From assembly GCF_000315625.1 (NCBI RefSeq), contig NW_005434560.1, forward strand, positions 1-32,371: 32,371 nt of DNA. The letters are read 5' to 3'. This DNA comes from Guillardia theta CCMP2712 (Eukaryota > Protista > Cryptophyta). The first letter of the stretch is position 1, and every line of letters begins with the position of its first letter. The notes below the pieces were generated by a model. That model did not search any database. It had not been told where the DNA came from and saw only the letters and a program-made list of their open reading frames with translations. Positions 1,481-29,630 of the stretch are shown one piece after another. The position numbers and the translations under genes are program-made.

Positions 1481-2226
1481 CATAGCGTTGCCGTTCCGTA
1501 TCCTTGTCGGATCAGTAAACCAGGGTGGTTCTTATAGTAGTTTTAGTCAAATTCAAGCGGCAAGAGAAAATTGAGCTAAAAATGTTGGCTCCGTCAATTT
1601 ATGTACCTTTTTCGTTGCCAGGGCTGCCGGGCCATCCAAGACAAGAAGGGCAATGTTGAGCAAAACCTTCCTCTATTTGATATGAATAGGCGTGTATAGT
1701 TGACTAAATAATCATGAGGAGGCTCGGGGTAGGTATTCAAATGATTTGAATCTTTCCAACGGCCTCCAGCCCGTGTTGAGGGGTAGGGGGTAGTGCAAAC
1801 TTCTCGTATCAATCTAAAACACTTGTAAACGACCTCACACTTGCCCCGTCTCTTCCCTATCCCACTACTCCCAATGTACTCAGGGACTGTTTGCTCAGCT
1901 GCTGAGCGCAGTCAAGGACCATGGCCCCTCAATGCTAACTCCTGAAACTGCCAGGCAAGTACTGAGATCAAACAGCTCAATTCTTGGCTGAGAATCACAC
2001 CTATAGTAGGTTGAGGGTGTTGCATCTCATCGAAATTTGCACTTGCGTACCAAAGCACTCATCAGCTATAGGTGATGGTTGTTCACTTCCAGAAGAAGGG
2101 AAACATGAAGGGAACCGATCAGAGAAGCAACCTTCGAAGACATGAAGGAAATTCGATTCTCCTTGTTGTGTTGACGCCCTAGCTTCCTTTACCTGAATGC
2201 TTCGTCGGTTGAATAAGAAACATATT

Positions 2227-3450
2227 TCAAGAGACTTCCTGTTGCTTTGCCATGATTGCGTTTTTTGTGGCTTCTCCCAACCTATTGTTATATGGCGGTG
2301 TCATTTGTGAGGAGGTGAGGAGTTTGAGAGGCTGGGGGAAGGAGAGGGGAGGGGTTGGAAGGGAAATGGACGCCTGGGAGGCCAGGCTAGTTGATATGCC
2401 TGATCGCTGCGAGAGGAGATGCCGGAGGAGAGACCGTGTTTACTCAAGACCACTAGCGAGGAAGGCAGGAGGGCGAGGAGGACATGAGAGGAGAGGAAGG
2501 AGAAAGCTACGGGTAGAGACGGTTTACTTGACAGCACTAATGAGGAAGGGATGCTTCAGAGCCTCCAGTGCTGTAATCCTCGTGCGGGGATCGATGTTGA
2601 GGCAGCAGTTGAGGAAGTCCCAGATCGCATGTTTCTCATCCACCTCCAGCCAGTCCTTGCATCCCGCATGTGCGCCCAGGGAGCTTGACAAGGTCCGCCA
2701 TGTTTGCTTGAAACCGCGGGCATAGCTGAGATGCAGTTCCAATGGTGGAATCTGAATGACATCAAGTTAGCAACCTCAGGCCTCCCGCCACCATATCACC
2801 CTCATCCTCATCCTCTTGATACAACAACGCCGACGACAACAATTTTACCTTAACGTCGAGGAGCTTCCACACAGCATCCATGCTCTTGATGTACATGCGC
2901 AAGCTGCTCAGACAGTCAGACAAGCGCACTTCCAAGGTACACAAAGAGCGTACCCGTAGATCTCCATCGTTGCCGTGACTATGTCGTTATACTGGAACCA
3001 TTGGAACTGTGTCGTGCGGCACAGCAGGGTAAGCAGTACTACCCCAGCAGCCCACACGTCCACTGCTGTGGTCTGGCACTGCATGCCCATGAGCACTTCG
3101 GGCGCTCGGTATCCCCGAGTTCCCGCGCGTTTGACTGGACGTTCGAATTTGACCCCTGAGTTCCTCACTGTCACCGATGCGTTCGTCTTGCTGACGCCCA
3201 ACATGATCCGCCTCTTCGCCATCTGCTGCGCCATCTCTAGCTTCTCCTGCTCCTTTTGATTCCGCGAGGAGCGAGAGCTGGCCGTAGAAACCTCACAGGG
3301 CAAGATGTTGCCGATGCTGCGGCCTGATGACTGCATTTGTTTCTCTGCCAGCCCAAAGTCCACAAGCAAGTACTTCTTATTCCTTCTGTCGTAGAGGAAG
3401 TTATTCAATTTCACGTCTCGATGTATAATAAATGTATAATGTATAAGACA
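2227..3450 (-). pseudogene. CDC7: Cdc7 (DDK catalytic subunit)-like Ser/Thr kinase, 5'-truncated (N-lobe missing), with introns
   Basis: Motifs IIHRDVKxNNFLYD, LVDFGLA, a long insert, RAGTRGYRAPEVL, QTTAVDVWAAG and DPRTRITALEALKHPF are characteristic of Cdc7. No GxGxxG or VAIK upstream, where the sequence is cut by a GC-rich tract at ~3574. The last exon (LGEATKNAIMAKQQEVS*, stop at 2227) is inferred from a phase-compatible GT..AG intron. Confidence 0.8.
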
Positions 3451-3573
3451 GTTCTTGCTCAAGACCGAGTTTAATGCACACTGTGACACGAAACCACTGA
3501 GAATTGAGGCAGCACTGCACATGAGAGACTCCCGACTGTATGCTAGAATATGGAACTCAAGCATCATTGCAAC

Positions 3574-4205
3574 GCCGCCGCTGTTCCGATGACACGGATC
3601 GGACCGGGTACGGCCCGGTACCGCCGGGCATTGCCGCCGCGTGGGGCCGCCGCCTGGCTCGGAACTTGACTCTCACCGTTCAACGGTTGACTCACCGGCT
3701 CGGCGGTAGCCTTGAAGCCTCAGAGGTCCCGGAGAGTCCGGCTCGCCCGGCCGGGCGGCGGTCGGACCGTACCTTCGGAGTTTTCAGCCTGTGTTCAATT
3801 AACTCAGCGGGGCGGTAGTATCTGATCGGACGGACTGGCCGCACGGCTGGCATGCTGATCCCGGCATTAATCAGCAGTGCCGACGGTGACCGTCTCACTG
3901 AGCCTCCGCCGGGCGGCGGCGGCCGGGCGGAGCCCGCCGAGTCAGTCACTCAGCGGCTGAGTGCCGCGCCAGCCCGGCGCTCAGCTGACTCAGTGACTCG
4001 GCCTTGGAACCGCCGCACGGTGCCTGCTTGCCAGCGCCGGGGCCGGGCGGCCCCGGTACTACGGTAGCCTGAGTCACGGTGTCATCGGACACAACTTGAA
4101 CAGTCCGGGAGGTCGGCATAACTTAACATAAACTGATGGCATGCCAGGCTTCAGTCGGAACTTGGAACACTCAGTGCGCCCGAAATGACTCATGATTCAG
4201 GGCCA
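3574..4205. other. GC-rich, palindrome-dense patchwork tract of unknown origin
   Basis: Abrupt compositional shift. Short words (GACTCA/TGAGTC, ACTCAG/CTGAGT, CCGG, CGGC, GTAC) are recycled without periodicity. An 11-bp inverted repeat TCCGATGACAC (3585) / GTGTCATCGGA (4079) lies near its edges. Confidence 0.6.
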
Positions 4206-4227
4206 CAAAAAATACTAAGTTTCACTG

Positions 4228-5277
4228 TGGAACACGGCTTGACTGAAATTGAGGGGGTGTTCGGCCTGAAATCTTTGTGTGTCACTCAGCGGCCGGCCCG
4301 GGGCGCAAGCAAGTCCAACCTACATCGAACAACTTGAAAATTGAGGGGGTGTTCGGCCTGAAATCATTGTGTGTCACGCTCCTCCAAGTTTCAAGTTGTT
4401 CCATATAGTTTGGAGCAAGTCCAACCTACATGGAACTTGAGTCACGGTTGCCGCGGTGCAAGGGACTGAAGGGGAGGTGACTGCTGTGAATAAAGGAAGT
4501 GTTGGTGGTGTTGTGTGGTTCCGAAGTTCTGAGAGTTCTATCATCATCAGTGAAGGTGTTAGAGGCTGCACAGCTGTGTATCGTTCAGAGGTGAATAAGG
4601 TTGGGGTAAGGATCTCAGGTGTACTGAGAGATAGTGTTTGCCACGGTGGACATGATCTTGGGTTAAATAGAGTCTGGCCAGTAGGAGGTGGAGGTTGATT
4701 CGGCCTGAAATCATTGTGTGTCACGCTCCCGGAGTCCAAATTTCAAGTTGTTCCATATAGTTTGGAGCAAGTCCAACCTACATGGAACAACTTGAAAATT
4801 GAGGGGGTGTTCGGCCTGAAATCATTGTGTGTCACGCTCCTGCGGCCTGAAATCATTGTGTGTCACGCTCCTCCAAGTTTCAAGTTGTTCCATATAGTTT
4901 GGAGCAAGTCCAACCTACATGGAACAACTTGAAAATTGAGGAGGTGTTCGGCCTGAAATCATTGTGTGTCACGCTCCTGCGGCCTGAAATCATTGTGTGT
5001 CACGCTCCTCCAAGTTTCAAGTTGTTCCATATAGTTTGGAGCAAGTCCAACCTACATGGAACAACTTGAAAATTGAGGGGGTGTTCGGCCTGAAATCATT
5101 GTGTGCTCCTGCGGCCTGAAATCATTGTGTGTCACGCTCCTCCAAGTTTCAAGTTGTTCCATATAGTTTGGAGCAAGTCCAACCTACATGGAACAACTTG
5201 AAAATTGAGGAGGTGTTCGGCCTGAAATCATTGTGTGTCACGCTCCTGCGGCCTGAAATCATTGTGTGTCACGCTCC
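4228..5277. repeat. Hairpin-containing minisatellite (~107+30 = 137-bp unit) with an unrelated ~260-bp insert at ~4440-4698
   Basis: The unit recurs with a 137-bp period (4844, 4981). Each unit has a 16-bp perfect stem TTTCAAGTTGTTCCAT / ATGGAACAACTTGAAA around an imperfect inner stem. Confidence 0.93.
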
Positions 5278-6850
5278 CATCGCAAGTCAGCTTTGATGGC
5301 CATTATGGCCTTTACAGGCGTGGCTGGCCCTCCGAAGCTCAATCATGATGCATCGCCAATACGATATCAAATATCAAAATAAAAAATATCAATGTTGAAA
5401 GTTTTCCGCCACTGTGAACTCTGCGAAGCCGTACAGATATGAGGATGTGCAGCGTTTGACAGAGCAAGACAAGTCAGGTGAGCATTATCTCTTTTTTTCA
5501 TCGAAATTATCACGGGAAGAGATCCAAATGACGTGTTCTTGATGCAGGTTGGAATGATTTGCAGCCTTTGGCAACTTGTATGAGATTGATGAACGGGTGA
5601 AGACTTTGGCAAGTGCCCAACCAATATTACAAACCGGTATCCAGGAGTACGTAGACGTACCAGTAAGCCGCCCAGCATACAAAACTCTCGAGACAATGGC
5701 TGCATACGAAGGGGTTTTCGACACATCGCAGAACTGTCCCGATGTGAAAAGGTTGTGACATGAAATGGGCACAAACAAAGATAAGTTCAGGACTCGGGAG
5801 TCGATCAGGTCTAGGCAAAATATTGACATGGTCATCTCACTGCATGGAAGAACATGCAAAACTGAAGGAAAAGCTCAACGGAAAGTTCTAAATGAACAGA
5901 TACAGCGCATTTTAGCAGTCACGGTCGGAGCAGCTCGATGCTTGAAACAAAGATGATCCTCAGTACAATCGAATGATGACAAGTAAGTCCCGTGGTTCGT
6001 GAAGGATTCTTCATCCAATTCTTAAGGATGTGTTGGAACGATGAAACATTTTGCAAATCACCAATTTCATCACACTGACTGATGCATCATGTAAATATTA
6101 CTGGTGTGAACTTGCATCAGATTCTGTTCATCGGATGAGCCGCTACCAAGCAGTTGATGTCACAGCAAACAAGAGAGCCGTTTTGAAGATGTTGATATTC
6201 CTGACCGTAGAGCATTCAAGATGTGGCCACATGTCACATGCTTTTTGGTTAACGCAGATACACCCTCGCCAGGCAAAAGATGGAACGTCTTCAGGATTAC
6301 AGGGAGGTCGGTTGTGCTTGTACCCTGATTGTAACTCTTCTAATAAAGATATGATAACCTGAATGTGCAATTCTGTTTGTTGATTCACAGTGTTTGCGAC
6401 TCGATTGCAATCATCGAGTGCTTGCTCTGTTGAACAAGGCACTCCTCTGTAGAGCCATGCGACAAGAACACTACAGTTGCACGGTAGCATTGCGACACCA
6501 AGACAGGATTGATCCGATGAACGTCTCATTTATTGATATGCAAAGGCATCATCTGCACATTGCTTCATTTCTGACTAGGTTTCTGTGCAATCGAAATCCT
6601 GTGAAAATATCATGACAGAGGAAAAATTTGAAGCGAAACGGAAAAATCATCGAAATATGATCATAGATATAGTGATTCATGATCAACAACGGTTCTCTAC
6701 AGTCATCTATGCGGGCAGGAACAGTCATCTTCTGTGCAAACGTCTCTTCATGTATCGTTGAACGGTTGAGTGCATGTAAGACTTGCCTCCATAGAAAGGT
6801 GAAGTGCATGAATCCTGACTGTAAGACTAGAAGAATTGAAAGCAAGTGAT
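5278..6850 (+). pseudogene. Degenerate, intron-containing internal gene(s) of the CATAGCGTTG element; possibly a KDZ/CxC-type transposase remnant
   Basis: Short peptides SFDGHYGLYRR and GCAAFDRAR near 5290-5475 resemble the DGxF/YxLxR and CxxFxA pattern of Kyakuja-Dileera-Zisupton transposases (by eye only). A Cys/His-rich peptide (WPHVTCFLV..GKRWNVF) is conserved in copy A2. Many stops and frameshifts. Confidence 0.3.
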
Positions 6851-7890
6851 GACATGAGAACACATATCTAGACAGAAAAGTCGCTCAAGGTACAGCTGGA
6901 TACAAATTTCTCACAAATCACAGTCATGCATTTGAGCGCAACGTGCAACCTACGGCAATTTGAATAAAGGGTCAATCAGAGTTGATTCTGTTCAATGGTG
7001 TATCGATTATCAATTCCTTACCTGATCATAAAAATTTCATCTTGTCTTCGAAGAATATTTGCAAGTACACCCGCGGATTGTTTGAACCTAGGGTGCATAT
7101 TCCATTGCAGGATGGATGATTCAAACCTTGGCCCAACCTGTAGAGTTGAGAAAGAAGCTCGATCATCTCTTACAGGTATGATATGAGATCTTCATCTCAT
7201 TTCTATCTCAGTTGGGTTGGATTCGAAGTCTCTCAATATCAAAGTTCATCCTGGTGAGTCAGGAAGGCACCATTTCATCGCTTCTTGCTCGTCCAGGGAG
7301 AGGGGGCTTGGGGAAGGAGAAATGGGTGTTACCCCCACCCCCTATTGTACAGTTTCAAACTCGTTCAAAGGTGGGTAGTTGAGGGTGCTCCATACCCACC
7401 CCACCACCCAAAATGACTCAAACGGAGGGGTTCTCGGATCCGAAGGAGTCCCGCCTCCATCACCCCCTCTCATTTGAATTCAAGATGGTTCAGGCCGACC
7501 CCACATACAGGCTTGCAGTTTTCTTATGTATGCCCATATGATTTGATCGGACAGGTGAAGCAAATCACCAGCATGCTTGAAGATTTTTCATGGGAGTGGG
7601 ATTATACTTGTACCGGATGTGTACAATACATAGGGGAGAACCCCGAATGGTACCAAAAGAGTACCAAAGTCACATGGTTCGGACTGTACTAACTGGTACC
7701 AAGAAATTGTACTCAAGAAGACCCTACCCCTGAAAAAGTTCTGCTTGGCTCTTCGTGATTTGAATTCGGAACACGGTCGGAAGACCCACCCCGCCCCCAC
7801 ATGAGGCGTGGTATGCGTGGATTTGAATCTACCAACCTCACCGCGAAACGTTTTAGAGCTCCAAGGTCAATTGAGAAAGGCAACGCTATG

Positions 7891-8794: not shown

Positions 8795-10919
8795 CATTCT
8801 GGGGTCAAACCGCGTTGGTTTTCGCCCTATATCTTCAAGGGGGTGGTGCATGGGAAAATGGGGGTACACGGCGTGTGATTTGCGCAGGTTGAAATTCTGT
8901 ACTGTTGAAATTCAAACCATACTCAAAACCGTGATTAAAAGTGATTTTGGAAGTTTAGCTTATCGTTTCTTGGTACCTTCTAAAATGTTTTAATTCTACA
9001 CGCCTCCACCCACTACCCCAGCGCGTCTCCCCTCACCATTCTGCTCTCATGTCGCGAAGCTCTTCTCTGCCGATCCTTGTCTTCAGTGTTTGAGTTTTGT
9101 GCGAGCATGTTTGCCCAAGTTGCAGTCACTTGCAGCAGGTGAGCCTCATCAATATTTCTCTTCGTCAAACCCGCTGTGCCGGTTGGTGAAAATGTTACAA
9201 TGCCATAATCTGTTTTCAAAGTTTGGTTTGTTGAACGCATCCATTGATGGGGACGAGTATACCACGAACACACACGAGCATGAAGAGACTCGAAATTATT
9301 TTGTGAGAGGAAAAGGTGCAAATGAACTCATTACATCACACAGGTAGAGAGTTCTTCTGTGGATTGTTCATTTTTTAATCGTTGTGAACAAGTAGCAAAA
9401 GCATGGCGATGTTGATAACTAGGTTCTGAATGGTTGCAGCTGAAACGCACATGATTACAAGATTCCAAGACCTTTATTCCACGAAGACCTTCATCTTCAT
9501 GTACTGGATGGAATATCATATTTATGAGAGATGCTTCACTGTGCCACATGACTTGTTCACATCATGTTTGTACTTCTCCGCCTTTGAATGATGCATCTCT
9601 TGTTGCATGACTTAAAAACCACTTTGTGAAGATGCATAGTCTTGTATATATCCATGTCCACATGCTCAAAGCCTTGCCACTTTGTGACAAACAATATTGA
9701 AAAATCTTGAAGACAGCAAACCCAACGGCACAGTGTTGGATGGCAGTGCACCTACAGCATGTGCTTCGATTCTGTTGTGCGCGCACCATATGCTATTGTG
9801 GTTGTCATTATCATTGACTGGAAGTCAGTGTCAATTTGCTGGTAGTTCGACATCCTGAGATAAATGCTTCGAATGAATAATAAATGTCAAATCAGATATC
9901 ACCTCCAACCTTGATTCTACATTCATGTCAGTCTGATTGCAACGCACAATGGATTCTTGCATGCAAGCTGACAAGCTCGAGACTTGATCTCTGATATGAT
10001 CTGAGGCTTAATTGGACGTCAACAGCTCCGCCATTAGGGAAGCAAAGCAAAGTTCATGCATTTCACCAAATGTGCGAACATGCAAAGGACTTGAGTGAGG
10101 AGAGTTTGGAGAGAGGAGGGGAGATACTTCAACAAGAGCTTCGTGAGAGTCAAGTAATTGGCATATTTTAAAGAGTCAAATATCATCAAACTTTTTCTGA
10201 ACGTGTGAAGCAACGATGTAACGAAGCGTACAGAAGACATGCCGAGGAGGGAGTCAAGTGAGATGTGATTGCGCCTTAATTAAGTGAACTCGTCATTATC
10301 TTACAGATATTATTATTCAGTTCACTTTTCAGATAAAGTACATTACTCTGAGAGCCCAGAAGTCTTGAAGAGAACATTGATGATACGATTGACTTAGTCG
10401 TCGGACATGTAGGATGACGAACTCATGCAGATTGATCCACTCCTGCAAGATCACCAAGTAAAAATTTATGCTGGATTCTTGATGCCAAGTGTACCTTGCG
10501 ATCATCTTCTTACTCGGCAGTCCTTCACCTGTGCTCATGGTGGCAGCTCGCTGACCTGGCTGCTGTGCTCGCCCGGCGGCTCAGCATGACGGTGTGCGAT
10601 TTGACGATGGGAATGATGGGGAGTGTTTCCCCACCCTCATCGATAGGGTGGGTCATCAAAATTGTTTTAGATGGTACAAATCAGCAGTTATAAACCGTTA
10701 CTCAGTACAACTGCTTGTACCACGGATTCGAATAAACAATTCATTACCGTTAAAACAAGTGGACACGCCAGTTCAAAATTTGAAGCACCCCTACCACTGA
10801 TATTACCGAGCGCCACCCCTCAAAAACGATGGGGTACACCACCACCGGTATCCTATGAGAACAGCATACGCATTCCTCTTTTGCGTTAATAAAGACCAAC
10901 GCGGTTTGACCCCAGAATG
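8795..10919. mobile_element. 2.1-kb non-autonomous TIR element (element B) with 25-26-bp perfect TIRs
   Basis: (C)CATTCTGGGGTCAAACCGCGTTGGT at 8794/8795 and ACCAACGCGGTTTGACCCCAGAATG(G) ending 10919/10920. Lower-GC interior with decayed Cys/His-rich coding remnants. Satellite on both sides; no short TSD. Confidence 0.88.
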
Positions 10920-13971: not shown

Positions 13972-14006
13972 GTGGTATGTGTGGATTTAAGAAAAGCAAC
14001 GCTATG
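13972..14006. mobile_element. Orphan terminus of the CATAGCGTTG family
   Basis: GAAAAGCAACGCTATG (13991-14006) is preceded by GTGGTATGTGTGGATTT, which matches the subterminal GTGGTATGCGTGGATTT of copy A (~7808). Confidence 0.7.
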
Positions 14007-19525: not shown

Positions 19526-21162
19526 GCTGAGCGATTTGCGCGGTTGCAGGCATGAAAGGGGGGGTGGGGGGTGGAGGGGGCCGGGGGCTGCAATAAACTA
19601 CTACGCAGGAGGCTCAGGATTTAGGGGGTAGGAGCAATTAGAGGTCCAGAGTTGAGTGAAAAAAAATCTCTAATTGAAATTTCCTGTTTTGGTCATGATG
19701 TTTTTCAATAAATTTTTACAAATAAGACATCCCCTCTGTCAACCCGTAAAAGTAGGGGTACTCAGATTCCGCACCCCTAAAATAGTTTTAATAAAGTTTG
19801 GGATTTCAGGAAATCCGTCGGACAGGGATTTGAACTAGGAAAAATCCTGAAAACGCTAGCTAATTAGAGGTGTAAGATGTAGTCCGGACAAGTGTCTGAC
19901 AGATGCCGGACACGAGCATAAGGTCTTGTCCGGCAGGGAGGGCAAAGTTGAGTAAATATTTTGTCCTGCATCTTCAATGAATGCCAAATAATACCTTTGG
20001 AAAGCAGGGCATGATTTTACTAGGGTACTTGAAGTGTTTAGTAGGGGTAGCACAAAAATTATGCTACTTATAAAAGTTCTTATATAACACATGCCGGACA
20101 AACCAATTTCCTGAACCCTGTTGGAATAATACTACTAGGTTTTTTACTCGATGCTGGAATTTCATGAGGGGATGAAACGGTATGTGCATAGCGTTGCTTT
20201 TCCGGCCGGGCGCTCATAGGAAAAATTGGCAATATTTTTTTTTTTTCGAAGGACCTGAGGGGTCCCTTCATTCCATGCCAATTGGGAGTACCCTCCTTTG
20301 AGAAGTCATGTGGGAGGGTAGTCGCTCTCATGAAAATCGTTGCTGTGCAGGGCCAAAGAGGGGTAGGGTGATTTGAATTTGGTGGCGTGGACACCTCACC
20401 ACGCCAAACCAATGTAAAAGTACGCATTTTAGGAGTATCTGTGGTACCAACTTAAAATTGCAGCTCTTACATGGTACAAAATGAGGGCCAAACTGGTCGG
20501 AACTTCGACTTCCGAGAACCCCTCCATTTGACTGTTGTTGGGGGGTGGGGTAGGCATGGAGCACCCTCAACCACCCACCTTTGAAAGAATTTGAAACTGC
20601 GTAATAGGGGGTGGGGGGTAGCCCCCTTTTCTCATTCCCCAAGCCCCCTCTCCCTGGACGAGCAAGAGGCGATGAAATGGTGCCTTCCTGACTCGCGAGG
20701 ATGAACCTTGATATTGAGAGACTTCGAATCCAACCCAACTGAGATAGGAATGAGATGAAGATCTCATATCACATCTGTAAGAGATGATCGAGCTTCTTTC
20801 TCAACTCTGCAGGTTGGGCCAAGGTTTGAATCATCCAGCGTGTAATGTAATATGTGCCCTTGGTTCATACAATCCGCGAGTGTACTTGCAAATATGCTTC
20901 GAAGACATGATGACATTTTTATGAACAAGTAAGGAACTAATAATGGATACACCATTGAACAGAATCAACTCTGATTGACCCTTCTTTCAAATTGCAGTGC
21001 GTTGCACGTTGCGCTCAAATGCATGATTTGTGAGAAATTTGTATTCAACTGTACCTTGAGCGACTTTTCTGTCTAACAATATGTTCTCATGTCATCGCTC
21101 ACTTTCAATTCTTCTAGTCTTACGGTCAGGATTCATGCACTTCACTTTTCTACAGAGGACAG

Positions 21163-21333
21163 TGTTGTATTCTGGACTCATACCGGACGCCCCTTGGACG
21201 TAGCGTAGGGAAATAGGATGACGATGCAGATTCCTGCAGTGGTGCTGCTGATCTGATGAGCGTGTGTGCTTAATAAACAGAGATCCTAAGATCATCTGAA
21301 CTCAACGTCTTACGCAAGGTTGTGTATACAACA
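21163..21333 (+). repeat. 5' LTR (171 bp)
   Basis: TG...CA ends with an 8-bp inverted repeat and an internal AATAAA; identical by eye to 27185-27355. Confidence 0.97.
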
Positions 21334-21335
21334 TA

Positions 21336-21344
21336 TGGTAGCGA
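21336..21344 (+). promoter_or_regulatory. Primer-binding site (TGGTAGCGA), probably for initiator tRNA-Met
   Basis: TGG (complement of tRNA CCA) starts 2 nt after the 5' LTR. TGGTAGC matches the iMet-type PBS start. The tRNA identity was not verified. Confidence 0.65.
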
Positions 21345-21383
21345 ATTGGTTCACATTCCAGCACTGATTCAGAATCTCAAAGG

Positions 21384-23306
21384 ATGATTTCAGCAAAGAA
21401 AGCAAGCAAACTATCAGTATTGAAAGTGAGAAAATCGCGTAAGGCTCAGACCAGTGAACGAAGGATTCCGACATCTACGGAACAAGTCTCTGATTCAACT
21501 TCGATCCATCCAAATATTGGAGCTCAACAATTTCAATTCCCCCGTCCTTTTTCCGCAACGAAAGATGATGATTCAATTATGCAAGATCGACCACAGCAGG
21601 ATTCCCATCCAGCTTCTGGTGCTCGCCCAGCTTCTGGTGCTCGCCCATTTTTTTTCACGCCAGTACCAGCCCCGTCTATCTTCGGACAGGAGTCTCCGGC
21701 ACCGCATGCTTCCCGTCCTTCCGCTTTTGGTGCTTTTTCTCCGCGTACCCCTGCCGCAGAGCCCATCCCTGCGATGTCTTCGGGTCGGAATGCCCCTGCC
21801 GCAGAGCCCATCCCTGCGATGTCTTCAGGTCGAAATTCTCCTGCCACCAACGACAAGGAACCATCTCTTCGTCAACTTTTTGCTTTACTCCTGCAACAGA
21901 ACGCAGATGCCCAGCAACGTCAAGAAGCACTTGAACGCAAGCTGGATCGTCAATTTGAGCAATCTCAGGAATTCAATGATCGTCTATTTGCTCAATCCTA
22001 CGAACTTCAAGACCGTCTGGTTTCCGCCCTTTCAACCTCTGTGGCAGCAATCCAGCGCTTGAAGCCCCTCCCAGCACCGTCTAGCGCGCAGCCGTCTCCG
22101 CGCATGGCGAGTTCTCCCTCCCCTCCCAGCCCTCGGCTGATGCAGACGCATGTCATCCCGGTTGAGTCAGACCCTTCGTCGATTCCCGAAGCTCCCCCTC
22201 CAGTTTCTCTCTTACCAGAGCGACTGATGACTCCGTTGCCAGGTATTCGTGCTTCTAACATGCAGCAGAATCCCTCTCGTGACGCGTGCATGTCGCTGAT
22301 TCCTCAGCCCACGCCCGTCCGTCCTTCTCAACCTTTCCCTGGTGACAAACTCCCGAAATTTCAGCCCCGAACGTCCATCACCCCCTTTATCGGTCAGGCT
22401 GATTCTCGAAGCATTCACAGCTGGCTCTCTCAGATGGGACGCGCTCTGTCTGTTCAACGGATTCCCGGCAACCTGTGGGTTTACTATACAACGACATTTC
22501 TTGATGACTCTGTTCTTCAACGCATGTCTCACGATCGTCCTCTTGACGAATGGTTTCTTCTTCCTTGGTCGGAATTCTGTCTTTTCATCACGCAGCAATT
22601 TCCTCCCGCGGCTCACATCGCCAAACTACAGCACCAAGTGACCAATCTCTGTCAAGGCGTCAACGAATCGATCACTGATTATACTCTTCGGACGCAACGT
22701 TATGTTGACGAACTTTTACTCTACAAATCTGAAACTGTCGTATTTCAAGAGCACAATCTTCTTCAGCAATTTGCCAACGGTTTTCTCGACCCGGAAGTTC
22801 GACTCGTTATGGTCCCCATAGCGCACATGCATCCTGCTACAGCTGCCACGATGTCGCTTCTCGCACAGAAAGCTTTCGCCTTCGTCAAACCGTCTTCTTT
22901 GGTTCCGGCTCCACAGCCCATTTGTGCCCTTCAACCCTCTCCGTCGACGCCAGGAGTTCAGCCCTCCCCAGCTCCCGCGCAGTCCTCCAGTTCTCCCCCA
23001 AATTATTTCTGCACGTACTGCAAACGTTCTGGACACACGTTGAAGTACTGCCGCAAGAAAAAGCAAGCTGATCGCAATGCTTCTTCCGCCGTGACACAGC
23101 CCTCCCATCCTCCAGCGAGTCAAGCCGCCATCGTCAATGCCATCACGGCTCTCCTTCAGAATGGTGCTCCAGCTCCTAACCCGGGCTCTCCCGGTCCCGT
23201 CACGCATTCCCCTGCAGTCGCCTCCGCTTCTGCTCCTCCTGGGACAGTCTCTTCGTCCTCATCAGCAAGAGCTCAGCCTCCTGCTGATCCCCCGCCTCAG
23301 GAATAG
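21384..23306 (+). CDS. gag: Gag polyprotein (Pro/Ser-rich N-terminus, capsid-like core, CCHC zinc knuckle)
   Basis: 640-aa ORF after the PBS. CTYCKRSGHTLKYC fits CX2CX4HX4C; LCQGVNESITDY is a major-homology-like motif. Confidence 0.93.
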   Translation: MISAKKASKLSVLKVRKSRKAQTSERRIPTSTEQVSDSTSIHPNIGAQQFQFPRPFSATKDDDSIMQDRPQQDSHPASGARPASGARPFFFTPVPAPSIFGQESPAPHASRPSAFGAFSPRTPAAEPIPAMSSGRNAPAAEPIPAMSSGRNSPATNDKEPSLRQLFALLLQQNADAQQRQEALERKLDRQFEQSQEFNDRLFAQSYELQDRLVSALSTSVAAIQRLKPLPAPSSAQPSPRMASSPSPPSPRLMQTHVIPVESDPSSIPEAPPPVSLLPERLMTPLPGIRASNMQQNPSRDACMSLIPQPTPVRPSQPFPGDKLPKFQPRTSITPFIGQADSRSIHSWLSQMGRALSVQRIPGNLWVYYTTTFLDDSVLQRMSHDRPLDEWFLLPWSEFCLFITQQFPPAAHIAKLQHQVTNLCQGVNESITDYTLRTQRYVDELLLYKSETVVFQEHNLLQQFANGFLDPEVRLVMVPIAHMHPATAATMSLLAQKAFAFVKPSSLVPAPQPICALQPSPSTPGVQPSPAPAQSSSSPPNYFCTYCKRSGHTLKYCRKKKQADRNASSAVTQPSHPPASQAAIVNAITALLQNGAPAPNPGSPGPVTHSPAVASASAPPGTVSSSSSARAQPPADPPPQE

Positions 23307-26300
23307 GGTACCGCAGGTCATGCTCTCGGTTATTGCAGTTCGACGACGAGCATGATTTCTTCTTCTACGGAGCCCCAGCTGTGCTCTCATTTCATCTTCT
23401 CAGCTGAAACTCCGTCCCCTTCCGTTCTGCACAATTCAGCATCGCTGGTCACCGATCTCATCAAATTTCCCGTGACTTGTTCATCTATTTCTCCTGATGC
23501 TGACCCTTATCATTTTACAGCTCTTCTCGATGGCGGTGCTGCTGTCGATGTTATTTCGACCGCCCTCCTCGATCGTTTGCATATTCCCTTATCAGCTATT
23601 GACAGCTCTATTCGTATCCCTGTATGCGTCGCCAATGGAGTTCACTTACAGACTCTCGGCATTATTTCTCTTACTTATTCAATTGGCAAACACTCATTTA
23701 CCGATAATTTCAATGTGCTGCCTTCTACATTATCTACATGCATTTTTTCCCTGACGTGGCAAACTCGATATGGACTTGTTTTTCGTGCCCGAACCCGTGA
23801 AGTATGGATTGAATCTTCCCACAAGCAACAACTCGTGCGTCTTCCGACATGTGAAATGATTCCGCTTAATTGTCTTACAGCTCCCCAATCCTTTGCGCAA
23901 GTTACTTTCCTGTCATTGACCGATGTTTTTGCTTCTCAACAACAAGACAACGATGAGGACGATTGGTTTCTTTGCGTTCTCCAAGTTGATTCATCCTCCA
24001 CGCCACCGTCAGCCAGTTCTTTCTCTCCGGCTCGTTCTTCTGATGTGTCCCCAGAGGAGCAAGCAATTTCTTTACTTCTGGACGAATTTTCTGCTGTCAT
24101 TACCGATGATCTGCCCGCCAATTATAACATTTCTCGTGAATTTCAGGCCACCATTGACATTTTACCTGATGCTAAACCTGTCAGTCTACGACCCTATCGG
24201 CTCCCGCTTTTCCTCGAACAAGAACTTCAAAAGACGTTGGAATATTTGTTATCTCGCAACATCATCGAACCTTCCAACAGCCCCTTTGGCTTCCCCGTGC
24301 TTTACAGTCGCCGCAAAAACGACCCTCGATCTCCTACAGATCCCTCCAGCTATCGTCTTTGCACTGACTTGCGAAAACTTAATGCCATGGTCCACAGCAA
24401 CCCCAGGTATCCCACTCCTAACCCTGAGGAGATGTTAGAATCTGTCGCCGAGGTCATTCGTAAATCCAAGCGTTTCTTGCACCCTTCTGAATACAAACTT
24501 TGGATTTCAGCTCTCGATCTTCTCCGCGGTTTTTGGCAAATTCCTGTTGCCCCTGATCATCGCAAATATGTCGCCATCATCACCAAGTTTGGCAAATATC
24601 AGTTTCGCAATCTTCCATTCGGCTACATTCACGCAAGCAATATTTTTCAAGAATGGATTACTCTTCTCTTTCGTGATATTACCAGTGTATTCCCGTACAT
24701 TGATGACTTGCTCATCCTTGATTTCGGCACGTTTGATCAACACCTCAACACTCTACGTCGCGTTCTTCTGCGCTGCCGCGAGAATCAAGTTTACCTCAAG
24801 AAATCAAAAGTCAAGCTCTTTCAAGATAGTGTCGAGTTCCTCGGTCATCAAATCTCTGCTGATGGCATATCGACTCAATCCAGTAAGACCAGCGCGATCC
24901 TTGACTGGCCACCACCCAGCAACGCAAAGGAGATCAAAATATTTCTTGGGCTCTCCGGATATTACCGTCGCTTTATTCGCAACTATGCCCACATTGCTGC
25001 TCCTCTTCATGCTCTTCTTCGTAAGAATGTCGTCTTTCAATGGACTCCCGAGTGTCAGCAAGCCTTTGATCTTCTCAAACACCGGTTAACCTCCTCCCCA
25101 ATTCTCTCTCACTTTGATCCAGCGCTTAGGACAGAAGTTCACACCGATGCCTCAAACACAGCTCTCGGCGGTGTTCTTCTTCAGTACGACGCTGACAACA
25201 AAGAGAAAGTCATTGGATTCTACAGTCGCCTGTTTACTGATGCAGAAAGAAATTATCAAACCACTGAGCGCGAACTTTTGGCCATCAAAGACGTGCTTCT
25301 TCACTTCCAATTTTATCTTCTTGGCAAGCCCATCATCCTTCGTACTGATCACAAGGCTCTCACGTACTTTCAAACTCAAAAGGATCTCAAAGGTCGTCTT
25401 CGCCGCTGGTTAGAAACTCTCAGTGAATTCTCTATCGTCGAGATCGCGCACGTGAAAGGTACCGATAATGTCGTCCCTGACGCTCTCAGCCGCCAATATC
25501 CCGACGACGACGTCGCACCTCCACGCGATGACGCAATCCTACATTCAGATGATCAAGATTTTCATCATCTCCTTGCTCTCGATGCTCCTGCTGATAATGC
25601 TTCTCTCGTTGAATCTCTTCACGACACAATCGTCCAAGCATATTCCTCGTGTTCATACTTTTCTACAATCTATCAAGCAGTTCAAAACAACCCATCGTAC
25701 AAGCATTTTCACATTGAAAATCATCTCCTGATTCTAACAGATAGTCTTCACCGACAACGCATTTGCATTCCTCAATCTGTTCGCAAAGAAGTTCTATACC
25801 GTGCCCATGACCTTCACAGTCACCGCGGCTTCTCTCGAACATACTTGGCTCTTGTTCCTGTTGTTTATTGGCCCTCTATGCGTCAACAAGTCGAACGTTA
25901 TATCCTTTCCTGTCAATCTTGCATCCAATACAAATCTTATCGCAAGCCACAGATGGGACCGTCGCACAGTCAAGCAGCTCCGTCTGATCGTTTTGCTACA
26001 ATCTCCATCGATGTCGTTTCCGGCTTCCCGCCTACTCGTTCTCATTACGACTCGATCTTCGTTTGTGTTGACAACTTTTCTGGACGTGTCTTTCTGTCTC
26101 CATGCAAGAAGACTCTCACCTCTCAACAAGCTGCCGATCTTTTTGTTTCGAAAGTCTGCGCCAACCAAGGCCTTCCCAACGAAATCATTTCAGATAATGC
26201 AAAAATCTTCTCTTCTGCCTTCTGGACTAAACTTTTCGAACTCTTGCAGGTCAAAATCAAGCATTCTTCGCCTTACTATCCTCAAGGCAATGCTCGACCT

Positions 26301-27119
26301 GAACGCCTCAACTCCGTCTTGATTGAAGCTCTCCGCATCTACTGTGCCAATCGCGTCAACCATGACTGGGACAGATTTCTTCCCCTCTTCGAGATGCATT
26401 ACAATTCTTCCGTCAAACGTTCCACAGGCCTTGCGCCATTCGAGATTATTTATGGCCGCAACGTCAAAACTCAACTGGCTCTCCCTGACCTTTCCAACTC
26501 GTCTGATGATCCTGACGACATTCGCGAAGCCATCCAAGTGCACATGGAAGCAGCTCGCGACGCCCTCGATCACATGGCTCGTTCAACTGAACAGACCCTT
26601 GACCAACACCGTCGCCCTCACAATTTCAACATCGGCGATCTCGTGTGGCTCTCAACGACGAATATTCCCATCACCGACAGCTTTCCCAAGCTCCGTCCTC
26701 GTTTTATTGGTCCCTTCAAGATCCTCTCCTTTGTTTCTGACAACACTGTTCATCTCGAACTGACAGATCGCTTTCGTCATCTTGAACACAGCGTCTTCAA
26801 CCTCAAGTGGCTTCGCCCCCATCAGGACCGTGATCCCAACTTCGAGCTTCACGTCGATCGACCGGATCCTCTTTCGACAGCTCAAGGACTTGAATACGAA
26901 GTGGAACAAATTCTCGACAAACGTCAACGTGGTCGTGGTATCCAATATCTTGTTCATTGGAAAGGCTATCCTAACCCAGCTGATCACTCCTGGAAATCAG
27001 CTTCTGAACTCAACAAGAAATCTGGTATTCGTGCTTTAATTCAACAATTTGAATCTTCTTTATTAGCTCAAGCGTCACCTTCCCGCCGCTCTTCTTCCTC
27101 TTCTTCTGCAGATCCTTAA
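23307..27119 (+). CDS. pol: Pol polyprotein: protease, RT, RNase H, integrase, chromodomain; in frame with gag after a single TAG
   Basis: LLDGGA (PR), LPFG and YIDD (RT), TDAS..ERELLA (RH), H-H-C-C plus ISIDVV/ISDN/ERLN (IN), PRFIGPF, and YEVEQILDKR..YLVHWKGY..SW (chromodomain). Ty3/gypsy domain order. First ATG at 23352. Confidence 0.97.
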   Translation, partial: GTAGHALGYCSSTTSMISSSTEPQLCSHFIFSAETPSPSVLHNSASLVTDLIKFPVTCSSISPDADPYHFTALLDGGAAVDVISTALLDRLHIPLSAIDSSIRIPVCVANGVHLQTLGIISLTYSIGKHSFTDNFNVLPSTLSTCIFSLTWQTRYGLVFRARTREVWIESSHKQQLVRLPTCEMIPLNCLTAPQSFAQVTFLSLTDVFASQQQDNDEDDWFLCVLQVDSSSTPPSASSFSPARSSDVSPEEQAISLLLDEFSAVITDDLPANYNISREFQATIDILPDAKPVSLRPYRLPLFLEQELQKTLEYLLSRNIIEPSNSPFGFPVLYSRRKNDPRSPTDPSSYRLCTDLRKLNAMVHSNPRYPTPNPEEMLESVAEVIRKSKRFLHPSEYKLWISALDLLRGFWQIPVAPDHRKYVAIITKFGKYQFRNLPFGYIHASNIFQEWITLLFRDITSVFPYIDDLLILDFGTFDQHLNTLRRVLLRCRENQVYLKKSKVKLFQDSVEFLGHQISADGISTQSSKTSAILDWPPPSNAKEIKIFLGLSGYYRRFIRNYAHIAAPLHALLRKNVVFQWTPECQQAFDLLKHRLTSSPILSHFDPALRTEVHTDASNTALGGVLLQYDADNKEKVIGFYSRLFTDAERNYQTTERELLAIKDVLLHFQFYLLGKPIILRTDHKALTYFQTQKDLKGRLRRWLETLSEFSIVEIAHVKGTDNVVPDALSRQYPDDDVAPPRDDAILHSDDQDFHHLLALDAPADNASLVESLHDTIVQAYSSCSYFSTIYQAVQNNPSYKHFHIENHLLILTDSLHRQRICIPQSVRKEVLYRAHDLHSHRGFSRTYLALVPVVYWPSMRQQVERYILSCQSCIQYKSYRKPQMGPSHSQAAPSDRFATISIDVVSGFPPTRSHYDSIFVCVDNFSGRVFLSPCKKTLTSQQAADLFVSKVCANQGLPNEIISDNAKIFSSAFWTKLFELLQVKIKHSSPYYPQGNARPERLNSVLIEALRIYCANRVNHDWDRFLPLFEMHYNSSVKRSTGLAPFEIIYGRNVKTQLALPDLSNSSDDPDDIREAIQVHMEAARDALDHMARSTEQTLDQHRRPHNFNIGDLVWLSTTNIPITDSFPKLRPRFIGPFKILSFVSDNTVHLELTDRFRHLEHSVFNLKWLRPHQDRDPNFELHVDRPDPLSTAQGLEYEVEQILDKRQRGRGIQYLVHWKGYPNPADHSWKSASELNKKSGIRALIQQFESSLLAQASPSRRSSSSSSADP

Positions 27120-27184
27120 CTCAAGATTCTTCTGAGCGAAGTCAACGACAGGTGGACCTTCTTGTCGTCTCGCAGTGGGAGCGA

Positions 27185-27355
27185 TGTTGTATTCTGGACT
27201 CATACCGGACGCCCCTTGGACGTAGCGTAGGGAAATAGGATGACGATGCAGATTCCTGCAGTGGTGCTGCTGATCTGATGAGCGTGTGTGCTTAATAAAC
27301 AGAGATCCTAAGATCATCTGAACTCAACGTCTTACGCAAGGTTGTGTATACAACA
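27185..27355 (+). repeat. 3' LTR (171 bp)
   Basis: Identical to the 5' LTR; followed by TSD GACAG. Confidence 0.97.
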
Positions 27356-29630
27356 GACAGGCTCACACGCACTCAACCGTTCAACGGTGCATGAAGAGAC
27401 GTTTGCAAAAAGGATGACTTCACCTGCTCGCATAGATTACTGTAGAGAATTGTTGTTGATCATGAATCACTATATCCATGATCAAGTGCATTGACCATTG
27501 CATTTCCATGTTTCATGACGTAGGATGATTTTTCTGCACTTGGATTTCTTCCTCAGTCATGATGTTTCCACAACGCTTCAGAAACCTAGTCAGAAATGAA
27601 ACAATGTGCAGATAAATTTGAGCATCAATAAAAATAAATGAGATGTTCTTCGAATCAATCCTGCCTTGTTTTGACGGTTCGCAATGCTGCCGTGCAGTTG
27701 TAGAGTTCTTGTCGCATGTGGCACTACAGAGGAGTGCCTTGTTCAACAGAACAAGCACTCGGTGATTGTAAAAGGATCACAAACGCTGTGAATCAATAAA
27801 TAGAATTCCACATCCAGGGTATCGCATCTTTATTAGAAGAGTTTCAATCAGGGTAAAAGCACAACCGACCTCCTTGTAATCAAGAACACGTTCCATCTTT
27901 TGCCTTGCGAAGGTGTATCTATGTGAACCAAGAAGCATGTGACATGTGGCCACATCATACATGCTCTACGGCCTGGAATATTGGCATCTTCAAAAGTGCT
28001 CATGTTTGCGTTGAGATCATCTGCTTGGCAGCGGCTCATTGATGAACAAAATCCGATGCAAGTTCACACCAGTAATATTCACATGATGCATCATGTGATG
28101 AAATGACCTAGGCCTTGGTGATTTGCAAAATGTTTCATCGTTCAAACACGTCCTTGAAAATCAGATGAAGAATCCTTCACGAACCACGGGACTTGCTTGT
28201 CCGACATCATTCGACAGCACTGCGGATCATGGTTGTTTCAAGCAGTCGAGCAGCTCACTGCTAAAATGCACCGTGCATTATTTATTGGCATCTTCTTGCG
28301 AGACTATCAGACATAGTCGTGCAGATATGTGTTCTTGAGCTCACAGGTGACCGTACAGCTTTTGAACAATCCAGTCACCATCTGATGATGATTCCCTGTC
28401 GTCTTGTGTGTAACCTCCATCCATTTACTCCAACTCAGTTTCCCTGTCATGCATCACAGATAGCTTAGGGTATTTTACGCTTTGGTTTCGATTGCAATGT
28501 AACCCTGTGATGGTGTTTTCACTTGTATTATTCATGCTCTTCGCTTACCAAACGATTTTTCGTGAGATTCACGAGCTCTACCAATCACTCCTCAAGGATC
28601 ATCATCTCTACACCTCAGGAATTTCCCATGAGTATGTTCGGTGAACATCTGACATCTGCACACGCTGCCGCGGGCTTGCTGTTTGCGAGCCATCGTTAGG
28701 GCAGTACAGAGCGGTGCGACGTGCCCCGTGCAAGGGGAGGCTCATGGCGTGTAGGGGGAGTTTCAAACTTGTTTATAAATTTGTACCACAAGAAGGCTTT
28801 ACAACTAAGTTGGTAGACTACCCCACGATCTGACTGTAACTTGTGGGGTGTAGCCCTACTTCTCTGTTTATACTCAACCATTACACAATACAGTCTAAAA
28901 TATCTTATTGGAAAACAAAATGAGAATTATAAAGCTGAATTCGAACCCTATTTCAGATTCTCAAACACGCCACCCCCAAATCTACCTAGAAAGCAGAACA
29001 ACCCCCCCACGGGAAAGCATACAGCCCAAAACAGACAAATCAAAATGTCAACGCTATGAGGGTGATGATGAGGGGTATGAGGACGATGATGCTTGTGATG
29101 GAGGGCGATGAGATTGTAAATTCCAACGCAATCATTGGGGTAGATACAGACTTCACGAAAGGTGGAAAATACGTGAAAAACCCTGTCAATTTCCAGTTGA
29201 GTTTCGACCTCGAAAAAAATCCTATACGTATAAATACGTTGCAAGTTTTTTCTTCCCGGCTTCTCTCCCATATCATTTTATACCTCCCCGCGACCCCTCG
29301 GCTCAAGCGCCACACTGGCATTTTGTCGGGAGGCTCATAACCTGTTTCCACGGGCCAGGACGGCCCGCACGGGCCTGGAGCTCGCCGGAGAGGCCCGGAA
29401 TATGCCCAAAGGATGTCAATCAGGCCGATCCAAAGCAAAGAGACATAATCAGGACTTTTTGGAGAGATTTCCGATCAATTAGTACATGTTGGCCGGGGGC
29501 CTGATCTCTCCGGGCGGCCGTGACCGGTCAGCGGACCGTGTCGACCTCGAAAAAAATCCTATAAGTATAAATACGTTGCAAGTCAAGTTTTTCTTCCCGG
29601 CTTCTCTCCCATATCATTTTATACCTCCCC

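What the first reader, a model, noticed from the sequence alone, without database searches (positions are those of the whole stretch)
1481..29058. A cargo-carrying TIR element family (CATAGCGTTG...CAACGCTATG) that inserts with no or 1-bp target duplication
Seen: five termini share CATAGCGTTG (1481, 7890, 14006, 20187, 29058). They fall into two end types (..GCYTTTC and ..GMCRTT) whose orientation agrees with the internal homology between copies A and A2. Removing A restores the satellite with only one extra G in a G run. Removing A2 joins ...GGGGATGAAACGGTATGTG|AGGGTGATGATGAGGGGTATGAGGAC..., a continuous acidic GDETVC-E-GDDEGYEDDD tract with zero duplication. Known: most DDE TIR superfamilies make 2-10-bp TSDs (P elements start CAT/CAN but make 7-8 bp); TSD-less TIR elements such as Spy are rare. 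Inference: an unclassified superfamily or a recombinase-mobilised element. Candidate enzymes are a KDZ-like transposase (remnant at ~5290) or the neighbouring tyrosine recombinase.
Basis: partly seen in the sequence, partly recalled or inferred. Interest (0 to 1): 0.8.

Follow-up and report, generated by a model that had tools for sequence, protein, structure and literature searches.

The report
Duplication-free inverted-repeat transposon family, Guillardia
The alga Guillardia theta carries a multi-copy family of gene-less jumping DNA elements with short inverted ends (CATAGCGTTG) that insert with almost no duplication of the target, an unusual trait whose enzyme is still unknown and is not the recombinase gene next door.

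Summary
CATAGCGTTG occurs exactly five times in the window. It bounds a 6.4-kb insertion in a 332-bp satellite (A), an 8.9-kb copy (A2) and a truncated copy (X).

Reads show a 15-40-fold depth jump exactly at position 20187, with diverse flanks in other copies. A metagenome contig holds a 98.5 % identical copy of A with a new flank. It is therefore a real family of roughly 10-40 copies in Guillardia theta.

Removing A restores the satellite with one extra G. A2 shows no duplication. The target duplication is 0-1 bp.

- A2's "cargo" is a nested young Ty3/gypsy element. A carries a CDC7-like kinase fragment and tandem repeats.
- No transposase or KDZ remnant is detectable, so both copies are non-autonomous.
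- The neighbouring tyrosine recombinase is a separate 3.6-kb Crypton (16258-19865) with its own ends. Three other loci encoding this recombinase or a paralogue lack the motif.

New points:
- A subterminal GGGGTAGGG motif sits inside three ends.
- Flanks 2 bp outside the ends mimic an inverted copy of the terminus (p about 1e-5).
- A second TIR element, CATTCTGG... (8795-10919), shares a TIR block with this family.

The scan had already noted duplication-free, CAT-ended TIR transposons with a RAG1-fold transposase in this genome. That is the leading candidate enzyme and was not tested here.

The parts
1481..7890 (.). Copy A: 6410-bp element inserted in one unit of the 332-bp satellite. It may include G 7891.
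   Evidence: An independent 98.5 % identical copy of 4984-7890, with a different flank, is on metagenome contig L003.
1481..1496 (+). Left (L-type) terminal inverted repeat of A, CATAGCGTTGCCGTTC
7875..7890 (-). Right (R-type) terminal inverted repeat of A, CATAGCGTTGCCTTTC on the minus strand
2911..3672 (-). CDC7-like protein kinase gene fragment inside A. It has the catalytic loop, DFG and APE motifs, and no N-lobe was found.
   Evidence: Pfam Pkinase E 1.6e-19. The CDC7 resemblance is my reading of the motifs.
4246..5277 (.). 137-bp tandem repeats inside A. They are also present at the start of L003, so they belong to the A subfamily.
5928..7438 (.). 1.5-kb core shared with A2 (84 % identity). 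It is non-coding.
   Evidence: No 3-base periodicity, and indels are not multiples of 3.
1780..1788 (+). Subterminal motif GGGGTAGGG, 300 nt inside the left end of A
   Evidence: The 9-mer occurs only 3 times in the window, always inside family ends and pointing inward.
7722..7730 (-). Subterminal motif GGGGTAGGG, 161 nt inside the right end of A
13702..14006 (-). Copy X: truncated copy with an R-type end only. The terminal 16 nt are identical to the A2 end, and a subterminal 20-nt block is shared with A.
14009..14019 (+). Flank half-site CCAAGCCTTGC, 2 nt outside the end of X. It matches 8 of 11 positions of an inverted copy of the terminus.
20174..20184 (+). Flank half-site GAAACGGTATG, 2 nt outside the R-type end of A2. 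It matches 9 of 11 positions of an inverted copy of the terminus.
20187..29058 (.). Copy A2: 2679-bp element, inverted relative to A, plus a nested retrotransposon
   Evidence: Depth jump and diverse flanks at 20187.
20187..20202 (+). R-type terminal inverted repeat of A2, CATAGCGTTGCTTTTC
29043..29058 (-). L-type terminal inverted repeat of A2, CATAGCGTTGACATTT on the minus strand
20360..20368 (+). Subterminal motif GGGGTAGGG, 174 nt inside the R-type end of A2
21163..27355 (+). Nested Ty3/gypsy chromovirus with identical 171-bp LTRs and a 5-bp duplication GACAG. It is not cargo.
   Evidence: Other family copies continue straight across this site.
16258..19865 (-). Separate Crypton-type tyrosine-recombinase transposon. 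It is not part of the family.
   Evidence: Boundaries come from copies on JH993180.1 and JH992970.1 and from a third flank in a run contig.
8795..10919 (.). Element B: a second TIR element in the same satellite, with 25-28-nt TIRs CATTCTGGGGTCAAACCGCGTTGGT. Its TIR shares the block GCGTTGSTTTTC with the family's R-type ends.

Best explanation
These are non-autonomous copies of a TIR-bounded DNA transposon family of Guillardia theta. Each end consists of a 10-16-bp terminal repeat (CATAGCGTTGCYTTTC at one end type) and a subterminal GGGGTAGGG motif 160-300 bp inside. The copies here encode no enzyme, so they must be moved in trans. I infer that a transposase multimer binds the two ends, cuts the element out, and joins it to a target with a blunt or 1-nt staggered cut, which leaves 0-1 bp of duplication. 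Targets are not random: the 11 nt lying 2 nt outside an end tend to resemble an inverted copy of the terminus. This suggests that the DNA-binding surface that holds an end also engages the target. The enzyme is neither the adjacent Crypton recombinase nor a KDZ transposase. The best lead, not tested here, is the RAG1-fold transposase of the duplication-free, CAT-ended TIR transposons that earlier scan notes report in this genome and in this same satellite. What is shown: the boundaries, the copy number, the absence of coding capacity, the 0-1 bp duplication in two copies, and the flank pattern. What is inferred: cut-and-paste chemistry and the identity of the enzyme.
For: There are five exact termini, paired in the correct orientation. 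A sits precisely in a satellite unit, with one extra G compared with 14 intact units. An independent copy of A, 98.5 % identical, ends at the same CAACGCTATG. It also has G next and then an unrelated flank, so the extra G may belong to the element, which would give zero duplication. Read depth rises 15-40-fold exactly at 20187, with diverse loose ends and a 5-kb contig carrying another flank. GGGGTAGGG occurs only 3 times in the window, each time just inside an end and pointing inward. Pfam finds no transposase domain in 103 pieces, and the core evolves neutrally. The flank half-site scores 3, 6, 8, 9, 5 and 5 of 11 at a 2-nt spacing. The sum of 35 was reached in 2 of 200,000 random samplings. 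Element B, in the same satellite, starts with CAT and shares the block GCGTTGSTTTTC. Scan notes describe duplication-free, CAT-ended, RAG1-fold transposons in this satellite (these are leads only).
Against: Only two complete copies could be examined. One sits in a G run, which makes the count ambiguous, and the other has no empty site for comparison. No autonomous copy and no transposase were seen. A and A2 share only the 10-16-bp tips, the subterminal motif and an internal core, while their terminal 300-450 bp are unrelated, which is odd for one family. A flank that mimics the end at a fixed 2-nt spacing is more typical of site-specific recombinases than of DDE-type transposases. Copy number rests partly on ChIP-seq depth and on summed contig depths, both of which are rough.
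Confidence: 0.55

Rival explanations
1. A serine-recombinase transposon of the IS607 or Tn4451/Tn5397 type. The element would excise as a circle whose joined ends form a perfect palindrome, GCAACGCTATG-NN-CATAGCGTTGC. It would then recombine at the central dinucleotide with a target that resembles this site, leaving hybrid half-sites at both junctions.
For: Each junction reads flank half-site, 2 nt, element half-site, and the flank half-site is significantly end-like. A lies in a G run with GG on both sides, and L003 also has GG next to the end. IS607 inserts at GG without duplication, through a 2-bp exchange (PMC6188088). Tn5397 always uses a central GA dinucleotide (PMC4430133).
Against: A 2-bp exchange predicts 6 G at the A site, but 5 are seen. 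The two dinucleotides at A2 differ (TG and AG). The nucleotides just outside the end vary among copies, whereas serine transposons keep a fixed dinucleotide. IS607 elements lack TIRs. No serine recombinase gene was seen.
Confidence: 0.1
2. The family is mobilised by the tyrosine recombinase of the neighbouring Crypton or a related Crypton. The joined TIRs would form a lox-like site with 12-13-bp inverted arms around a 6-8-bp spacer.
For: The Crypton lies between two family ends that form a perfect 16-bp inverted repeat. The joined ends have the geometry typical of tyrosine-recombinase sites (PMC3212892). Tyrosine recombinases make no duplication (PMC12220804). The only AACGCTA 7-mer in the window that is not in a family end lies 14 nt from the Crypton end. 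Many CryptonS elements end in TATGG, and the right end of A reads CTATGG.
Against: The two ends point away from the Crypton, and homology of X to A runs leftward from 14006. The Crypton has its own boundaries at 16258 and 19865, without TIRs, and 321 bp of low-copy DNA separate it from A2. The deletion copy on JH992970.1 lacks the 11 nt that hold the shared 7-mer. Three other loci with this recombinase or a paralogue have no motif within 10 kb. Every junction falls at one fixed point, whereas exchange across a 6-8-bp spacer would not give that. The satellite target has no matching spacer.
Confidence: 0.08
3. This is not one family. The shared 1.5-kb core would be an independent repeat nested in two unrelated elements that merely share a short end module.
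For: Apart from the tips and one 9-mer, the terminal 300-450 bp of A and A2 are unrelated. The core is about twice as deep in reads as the A2 terminal region.
Against: In both copies the core lies in the same orientation and at a similar distance (452 and 324 bp) from the R-type end. Its edges show no TIR or duplication. The tips, the end types and the subterminal motif all agree.
Confidence: 0.12
4. A rolling-circle element (Helitron, Helentron or Replitron-like), which also leaves no duplication.
For: No target duplication is seen. Helentrons have short terminal inverted sequences (from my own knowledge).
Against: The ends are not TC...CTRR. Insertions are at G|G and G|A rather than A|T or T|T. 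The two ends are symmetric, including the subterminal motif. No Rep or helicase domain was found.
Confidence: 0.03

Closest known systems
Non-autonomous TIR DNA transposons (MITE-like or deletion derivatives of cut-and-paste elements)
   Same: Short TIRs, subterminal motifs at both ends, no coding capacity, tens of copies, discrete boundaries, and variable internal content that includes a gene fragment.
   Different: Target duplication is 0-1 bp, whereas most DDE superfamilies leave 2-10 bp. The ends match no superfamily that I can name.
Spy (PIF/Harbinger-related elements without target duplication)
   Same: TIR elements that insert without duplicating the target.
   Different: From my own knowledge, Spy inserts into AAATTT-type sites and has a PIF-like transposase. 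Here the targets are G-rich and no such transposase is seen.
Duplication-free, CAT-ended, RAG1-fold transposons of G. theta noted earlier in this scan (unpublished AI notes)
   Same: Same genome and same 332-bp satellite as target. The ends start with CAT and there is no target duplication. Element B in this window shares a TIR block with the family.
   Different: The terminal sequence differs (CATAGCGTTG against CAT(T/G)CC). No transposase or BAH partner gene is present here. The link was not tested.
Transib / RAG
   Same: The tip CATAGCG matches the heptamer CACAGTG at 5 of 7 positions (comparison from my own knowledge).
   Different: Transib ends start with CAC and Transib makes a 5-bp duplication. 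Neither holds here.
Crypton
   Same: No target duplication, and a Crypton sits next door.
   Different: Cryptons lack TIRs, have short terminal direct repeats and encode the recombinase (PMC3212892). These elements have TIRs and no recombinase gene.
IS607 and Tn4451/Tn5397 serine-recombinase transposons of bacteria
   Same: No duplication, insertion at or in GG in one case, and junctions that read half-site, 2 nt, half-site.
   Different: IS607 has no TIRs and uses a fixed crossover dinucleotide. Here the dinucleotides vary, and the G count at the A site does not fit a 2-bp exchange.

Membership tests
Non-autonomous TIR DNA transposon | Terminal inverted repeats bounding a discrete insertion | tested here: met
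   A interrupts a satellite unit precisely. The TIRs match at 15 of 16 positions in A and at 10-12 of 17 in A2.
Non-autonomous TIR DNA transposon | Multiple copies with different flanks | tested here: met
   Depth jump and diverse loose ends at 20187, plus another flank in a 5-kb contig. L003 has a new flank.
Non-autonomous TIR DNA transposon | No functional transposase gene | tested here: met
   Pfam on 103 pieces hit only a kinase. The core evolves neutrally.
Typical DDE superfamilies (hAT, P, MULE, CACTA, PIF, Tc1/mariner, piggyBac, Transib) | Target duplication of fixed length, 2-10 bp | tested here: not met
   1 bp or 0 at A and 0 at A2. Only two copies were examined.
KDZ (Kyakuja-Dileera-Zisupton) | KDZ transposase domain or a remnant of it | tested here: not met
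   No Pfam hit at E up to 1 for ORFs around 5290-5870, and none among the 103 pieces.
Crypton | Encodes a tyrosine recombinase | tested here: not met
   None in A, A2 or X. The adjacent recombinase gene lies in a separate element, 16258-19865.
Crypton | No TIRs; short terminal direct repeats | tested here: not met
   The family has TIRs. Crypton features are taken from PMC3212892.
Crypton | The end motif travels with the recombinase gene in other copies | tested here: not met
   No CATAGCGTTG within 10 kb in L001, L002 or L096.
IS607-like serine transposon | Fixed crossover dinucleotide on both sides, no TIRs, serine recombinase gene | tested here: not met
   TIRs are present. The dinucleotides are GG/GG at A but TG/AG at A2, and they vary in other copies. 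No such gene was found.
Helitron / Helentron | TC...CTRR ends, insertion between A and T or between T and T, Rep-helicase | tested here: not met
   The ends are CATAG...CTATG, the flanks are G|G and G|A, and no Rep was found.
RAG1-fold duplication-free transposons of G. theta (scan notes) | RAG1-fold transposase paired with a BAH-like gene | not testable with these tools
   I had no sequence of that transposase, and the copies here have no long ORFs. There is only indirect similarity: the CAT tip, no duplication, the same satellite target, and a TIR block shared with B.

The most novel reading that the evidence does not exclude
The CATAGCGTTG family and the CATTCTGG element B would be non-autonomous members of an undescribed superfamily of cryptophyte TIR transposons that leave no target duplication. 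Their enzyme may be the RAG1-fold transposase noted elsewhere in this genome. Integration would select target half-sites that mimic the element's own end at a fixed 2-nt spacing. That would be a cut-and-paste element capturing its target in the manner of a site-specific recombinase.
Probability: 0.3. Interest if true: 0.8.

Novelty: new variant of a known kind. Interest (0 to 1): 0.55.

Why it matters
TIR transposons that leave no target duplication are rare, and the length of the duplication is a main diagnostic of the integration chemistry. This well-bounded, multi-copy family has 0-1 bp of duplication and flanks that mimic its own ends. If it belongs with the RAG1-fold transposons reported in the same genome, it would provide natural substrates for finding out how a RAG-like enzyme integrates DNA without a staggered cut. 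The answer bears on how V(D)J-type recombination evolved, and on transposon tools that insert and excise without a scar. The family also shows that satellite arrays in this alga are a preferred landing site for several transposon families.

Tried and rejected
- **KDZ remnant.** No Pfam hit.
- **The reading that 13991-20202 is one recombinase-driven cargo element bracketed by a 16-bp inverted repeat.** Rejected. The two arms are the outward tips of X and A2. The Crypton has its own ends at 16258 and 19865. A multi-exon GDP-fucose-synthase-like host gene fills 14100-16007.
- **Rfam scan of the window.** No match.
- **IMG/VR scan with the 16-nt end.** 92 hits, all inside conserved phage genes and none related to the window.
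- **JGI metagenome scan with a 22-nt block conserved in A, A2 and L003.** No hit.
- **Protein word search with an element ORF.** One metagenome contig, L003, which was useful.
- **Word search with the Crypton C-terminal ORF.** Nothing.
- **Representative search with an ORF near the left end of A.** Only an unrelated translated satellite.
- **Exact look-up of the 107-aa satellite ORF, to fetch more satellite arrays.** Not on record.
- **PDB sequence search with the recombinase N-terminal ORF.** Nothing significant.
- **A large imperfect duplication at A2.** Considered and rejected. The similar flanks are copies of a local purine-rich repeat, offset by 9 bp (read by eye).
- **Limits.** I could not collect genome-wide copies because no tool searches the G. 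theta assembly by DNA.


Full report
**Organism and setting**

The window is nuclear DNA of Guillardia theta CCMP2712. The recombinase ORF at 18236-19525 is 99 % identical to GUITHDRAFT_121198. The left 14 kb is an array of a 332-bp satellite interrupted by insertions.

From there rightwards the window holds, in order:
- a host gene with GDP-fucose-synthase-like motifs, on the minus strand at about 14100-16007 (my reading of the motifs);
- a Crypton;
- a large composite insertion;
- more repeats.

**Observation**

CATAGCGTTG occurs exactly at 1481(+), 7890(-), 14006(-), 20187(+) and 29058(-). I estimate 0.06 chance matches for an exact 10-mer in this window. Read from the outside inward, the ends fall into two types:
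- R-type, CATAGCGTTGCYTTTC, at 7890, 14006 and 20187;
- L-type, CATAGCGTTGCCGTTCC at 1481 and CATAGCGTTGACATTTT at 29058.

A (1481-7890) and A2 (20187-29058) share a 1.5-kb core in inverted orientation, which agrees with the end types. X (about 13702-14006) is a truncated copy. It shares the terminal 20 nt and a further 20-nt block with the right end of A, so its interior lies to the left of 14006.

**Are they real mobile units?**

Fourteen intact satellite units read GAGGCGGGGCTGAAGG. The unit that holds A reads GGCGGG|CATAG...CTATG|GGCTGAAGG, so the whole 6.4 kb went in as one piece.

A metagenome contig (L003, ENA ERZ930071) is 98.5 % identical to A 4984-7890. It stops at the same CAACGCTATG and continues into an unrelated purine-rich flank.

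Raw reads and contigs of G. theta runs were laid on 17200-21400. The results were:
- Depth per strand is about 7-16 in the flank 19879-20160.
- It jumps to about 200 in the bin that starts at 20161, and to 300-430 over the core.
- Loose ends at 20186 and 20187 have low agreement, which means many different flanks.
- A 5-kb contig holds another copy of the end at 91 % identity and runs on into other DNA.

Depending on the run, this gives roughly 5-20 copies of the A2-type end and 10-40 copies of the core. The raw reads are from ChIP-seq, so these numbers are rough.

**Target duplication**

At A the flanks total 5 G, against 4 in intact units. That means either a 1-bp duplication, or none if the element ends in ...CTATGG. 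L003 also has G after CTATG, which fits the second reading.

At A2 the flanks are ..GTATGTG| and |AGGGTGA.., with no duplication. No empty site was available to confirm this. The 'acidic tract' is a short ORF in a degenerate repeat of TGAGGG(G)ATGA-like units, not a demonstrated gene.

**Content**

The 6.2 kb inside A2 is a Ty3/gypsy chromovirus. It has gag, protease, RT, RNase H, integrase and a chromodomain, identical 171-bp LTRs and a 5-bp duplication GACAG. Other family copies read straight across its insertion site. It is a nested insertion, not cargo.

A contains a CDC7-like kinase fragment (Pkinase, E 1.6e-19), a GC-rich stretch and 137-bp tandem repeats. The tandem repeats also occur in L003, so they belong to the A subfamily.

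Pfam scans of 103 stop-to-stop pieces of at least 45 aa from A and A2 gave no transposase, integrase, recombinase or Rep domain. The A/A2 core differs at 210 sites with no codon periodicity, and its indels are not multiples of three. Both copies are therefore non-autonomous, and the KDZ remnant is not supported.

**The neighbouring recombinase**

After removing two introns, the minus-strand gene at 16413-19525 shows motifs typical of Cryptons..CRSFN....GTHSIRKGAATY.. and ..DRASW..KTYFKY (my reading). Its homologues are unnamed proteins of oomycetes and metagenomes.

Two other G. theta copies fix its boundaries at 16258 and 19865. They are on JH993180.1 (L002) and JH992970.1 (L096, a 94 % identical deletion derivative). 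A third flank appears in a run contig. The ends read AATTAGCTAGCGTTTTCAGG...GGACACTCTGA, with no TIR.

Between this Crypton and A2 lie 321 bp of low-copy DNA. No CATAGCGTTG occurs within 10 kb of these two other copies or of a 64 % identical paralogue, L001.

One point remains unexplained. The only AACGCTA 7-mer in the window outside the family ends lies 14 nt from the Crypton end. L096 lacks those 11 nt, so I treat this as weak.

Its two 16-bp arms are the outward tips of X and A2.

**New features**

1. GGGGTAGGG occurs only three times in the window. The sites are 300, 161 and 174 nt inside the left end of A, the right end of A and the R-type end of A2, and each points inward. So the ends are symmetric beyond the tips.

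2. The 11 nt that lie 2 nt outside each end resemble an inverted copy of the terminus.
   - The scores out of 11 are A-left 3, A-right 6, X 8, A2-R 9, A2-L 5 and L003 5.
   - A spacing of 2 nt gives the highest score at five of the six ends.
   - The sum is 35, against a null maximum over all spacings of 21.9 +/- 2.1. It was reached in 2 of 200,000 samplings.
   - The best-kept part is GCAAC, 9-13 nt outside the end.

3. A second TIR element, B (8795-10919), sits in the same satellite. Its insertion point lies 28 nt further along the repeat unit than A's, in a different unit. Its TIR is CATTCTGGGGTCAAACCGCGTTGGT. The 12-mer GCGTTGCTTTTC, allowing one mismatch, occurs only at the three R-type ends and in the left TIR of B, in the same orientation. 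The two families are probably related.

**Mechanism**

Symmetric ends with subterminal motifs, trans-mobilised derivatives and a fixed junction point all fit a transposase that synapses both ends. A duplication of 0-1 bp implies a blunt or 1-nt staggered attack on the target.

The end-like flank half-site at 2-nt spacing is what a serine recombinase would leave. Three observations argue against that:
- The G count at A is 5, not the 6 that a 2-bp exchange predicts.
- The two dinucleotides at A2 differ.
- The neighbouring nucleotides vary in other copies.

In addition, IS607 elements have no TIRs (PMC6188088).

A tyrosine recombinase would exchange strands across a 6-8-bp spacer (PMC3212892). 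That does not fit a junction fixed at the tip, or the satellite target.

Earlier scan notes describe duplication-free, CAT-ended TIR transposons in this genome with a RAG1-fold transposase and a BAH-like partner, which repeatedly hit this same satellite. I could not test that link. It is the best lead for the enzyme.

**Verdict**

This is a new, unclassified variant of a TIR DNA transposon with almost no target duplication. The scan has already met the general phenomenon on other DNA of this genome.

Noticed in passing
window 8795-10919: Element B is a 2.1-kb non-coding TIR element with 25-28-nt TIRs, CATTCTGGGGTCAAACCGCGTTGGT, inserted in the 332-bp satellite after CTACTGAC. The satellite resumes about 215 bp out of register, so its target duplication could not be judged. 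Its TIR shares GCGTTGSTTTTC with the CATAGCGTTG family.
   Followed up: partly
window 16258-19865 (minus strand); L002; L096 9837-12106: A 3.6-kb Crypton with a PHD-like finger, an acidic tract, coiled coils and a long polyQ run. At least three copies exist. The copy on JH992970.1 has a 1.04-kb internal deletion, which is also seen as a joint in run X15, and it lacks the first 11 nt (AATTAGCTAGC) of the 5' end.
   Followed up: partly
window 21163-27355: A young Ty3/gypsy chromovirus with identical 171-bp LTRs (TG..CA), a 5-bp duplication GACAG, and open 640-aa gag and 1255-aa pol ORFs. Several other copies with different flanks are visible in the runs.
   Followed up: partly
window 19700-21100 (runs X2, X4-X13); L003: Freshwater, lake and other aquatic metagenome runs hold 10-40 % of the 31-mers of this stretch. 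An ENA metagenome contig is 98.5 % identical to A over 2.9 kb. Either Guillardia-like DNA is present in those samples or the family occurs nearly unchanged in other cryptophytes.
   Followed up: no
window 2911-3672 (minus strand): A CDC7-like kinase fragment (HRDVKLNNFLY..DFGLA..GTRGYRAPE) lies inside A with no detectable N-lobe. It is either a captured gene fragment or a pseudogene. The parent gene was not located.
   Followed up: no
window 29207-29472 and 30218-30483: A 266-nt inverted repeat (98 %) encloses inverted fragments of the 332-bp satellite and 161-171-bp direct repeats. It lies just right of A2 and may be another TIR element or a rearranged piece of satellite.
   Followed up: no
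window 14100-16007 (minus strand): A multi-exon host gene with GDP-L-fucose-synthase-like motifs ([19 protein letters not shown]). It lies between the end of X and the Crypton and was not checked with a family scan.
   Followed up: no
window 19852-19858: The 7-mer AACGCTA, the core of the family terminus, occurs once outside family ends, 14 nt from the Crypton boundary. Whether this is chance or a shared binding motif is not resolved.
   Followed up: partly
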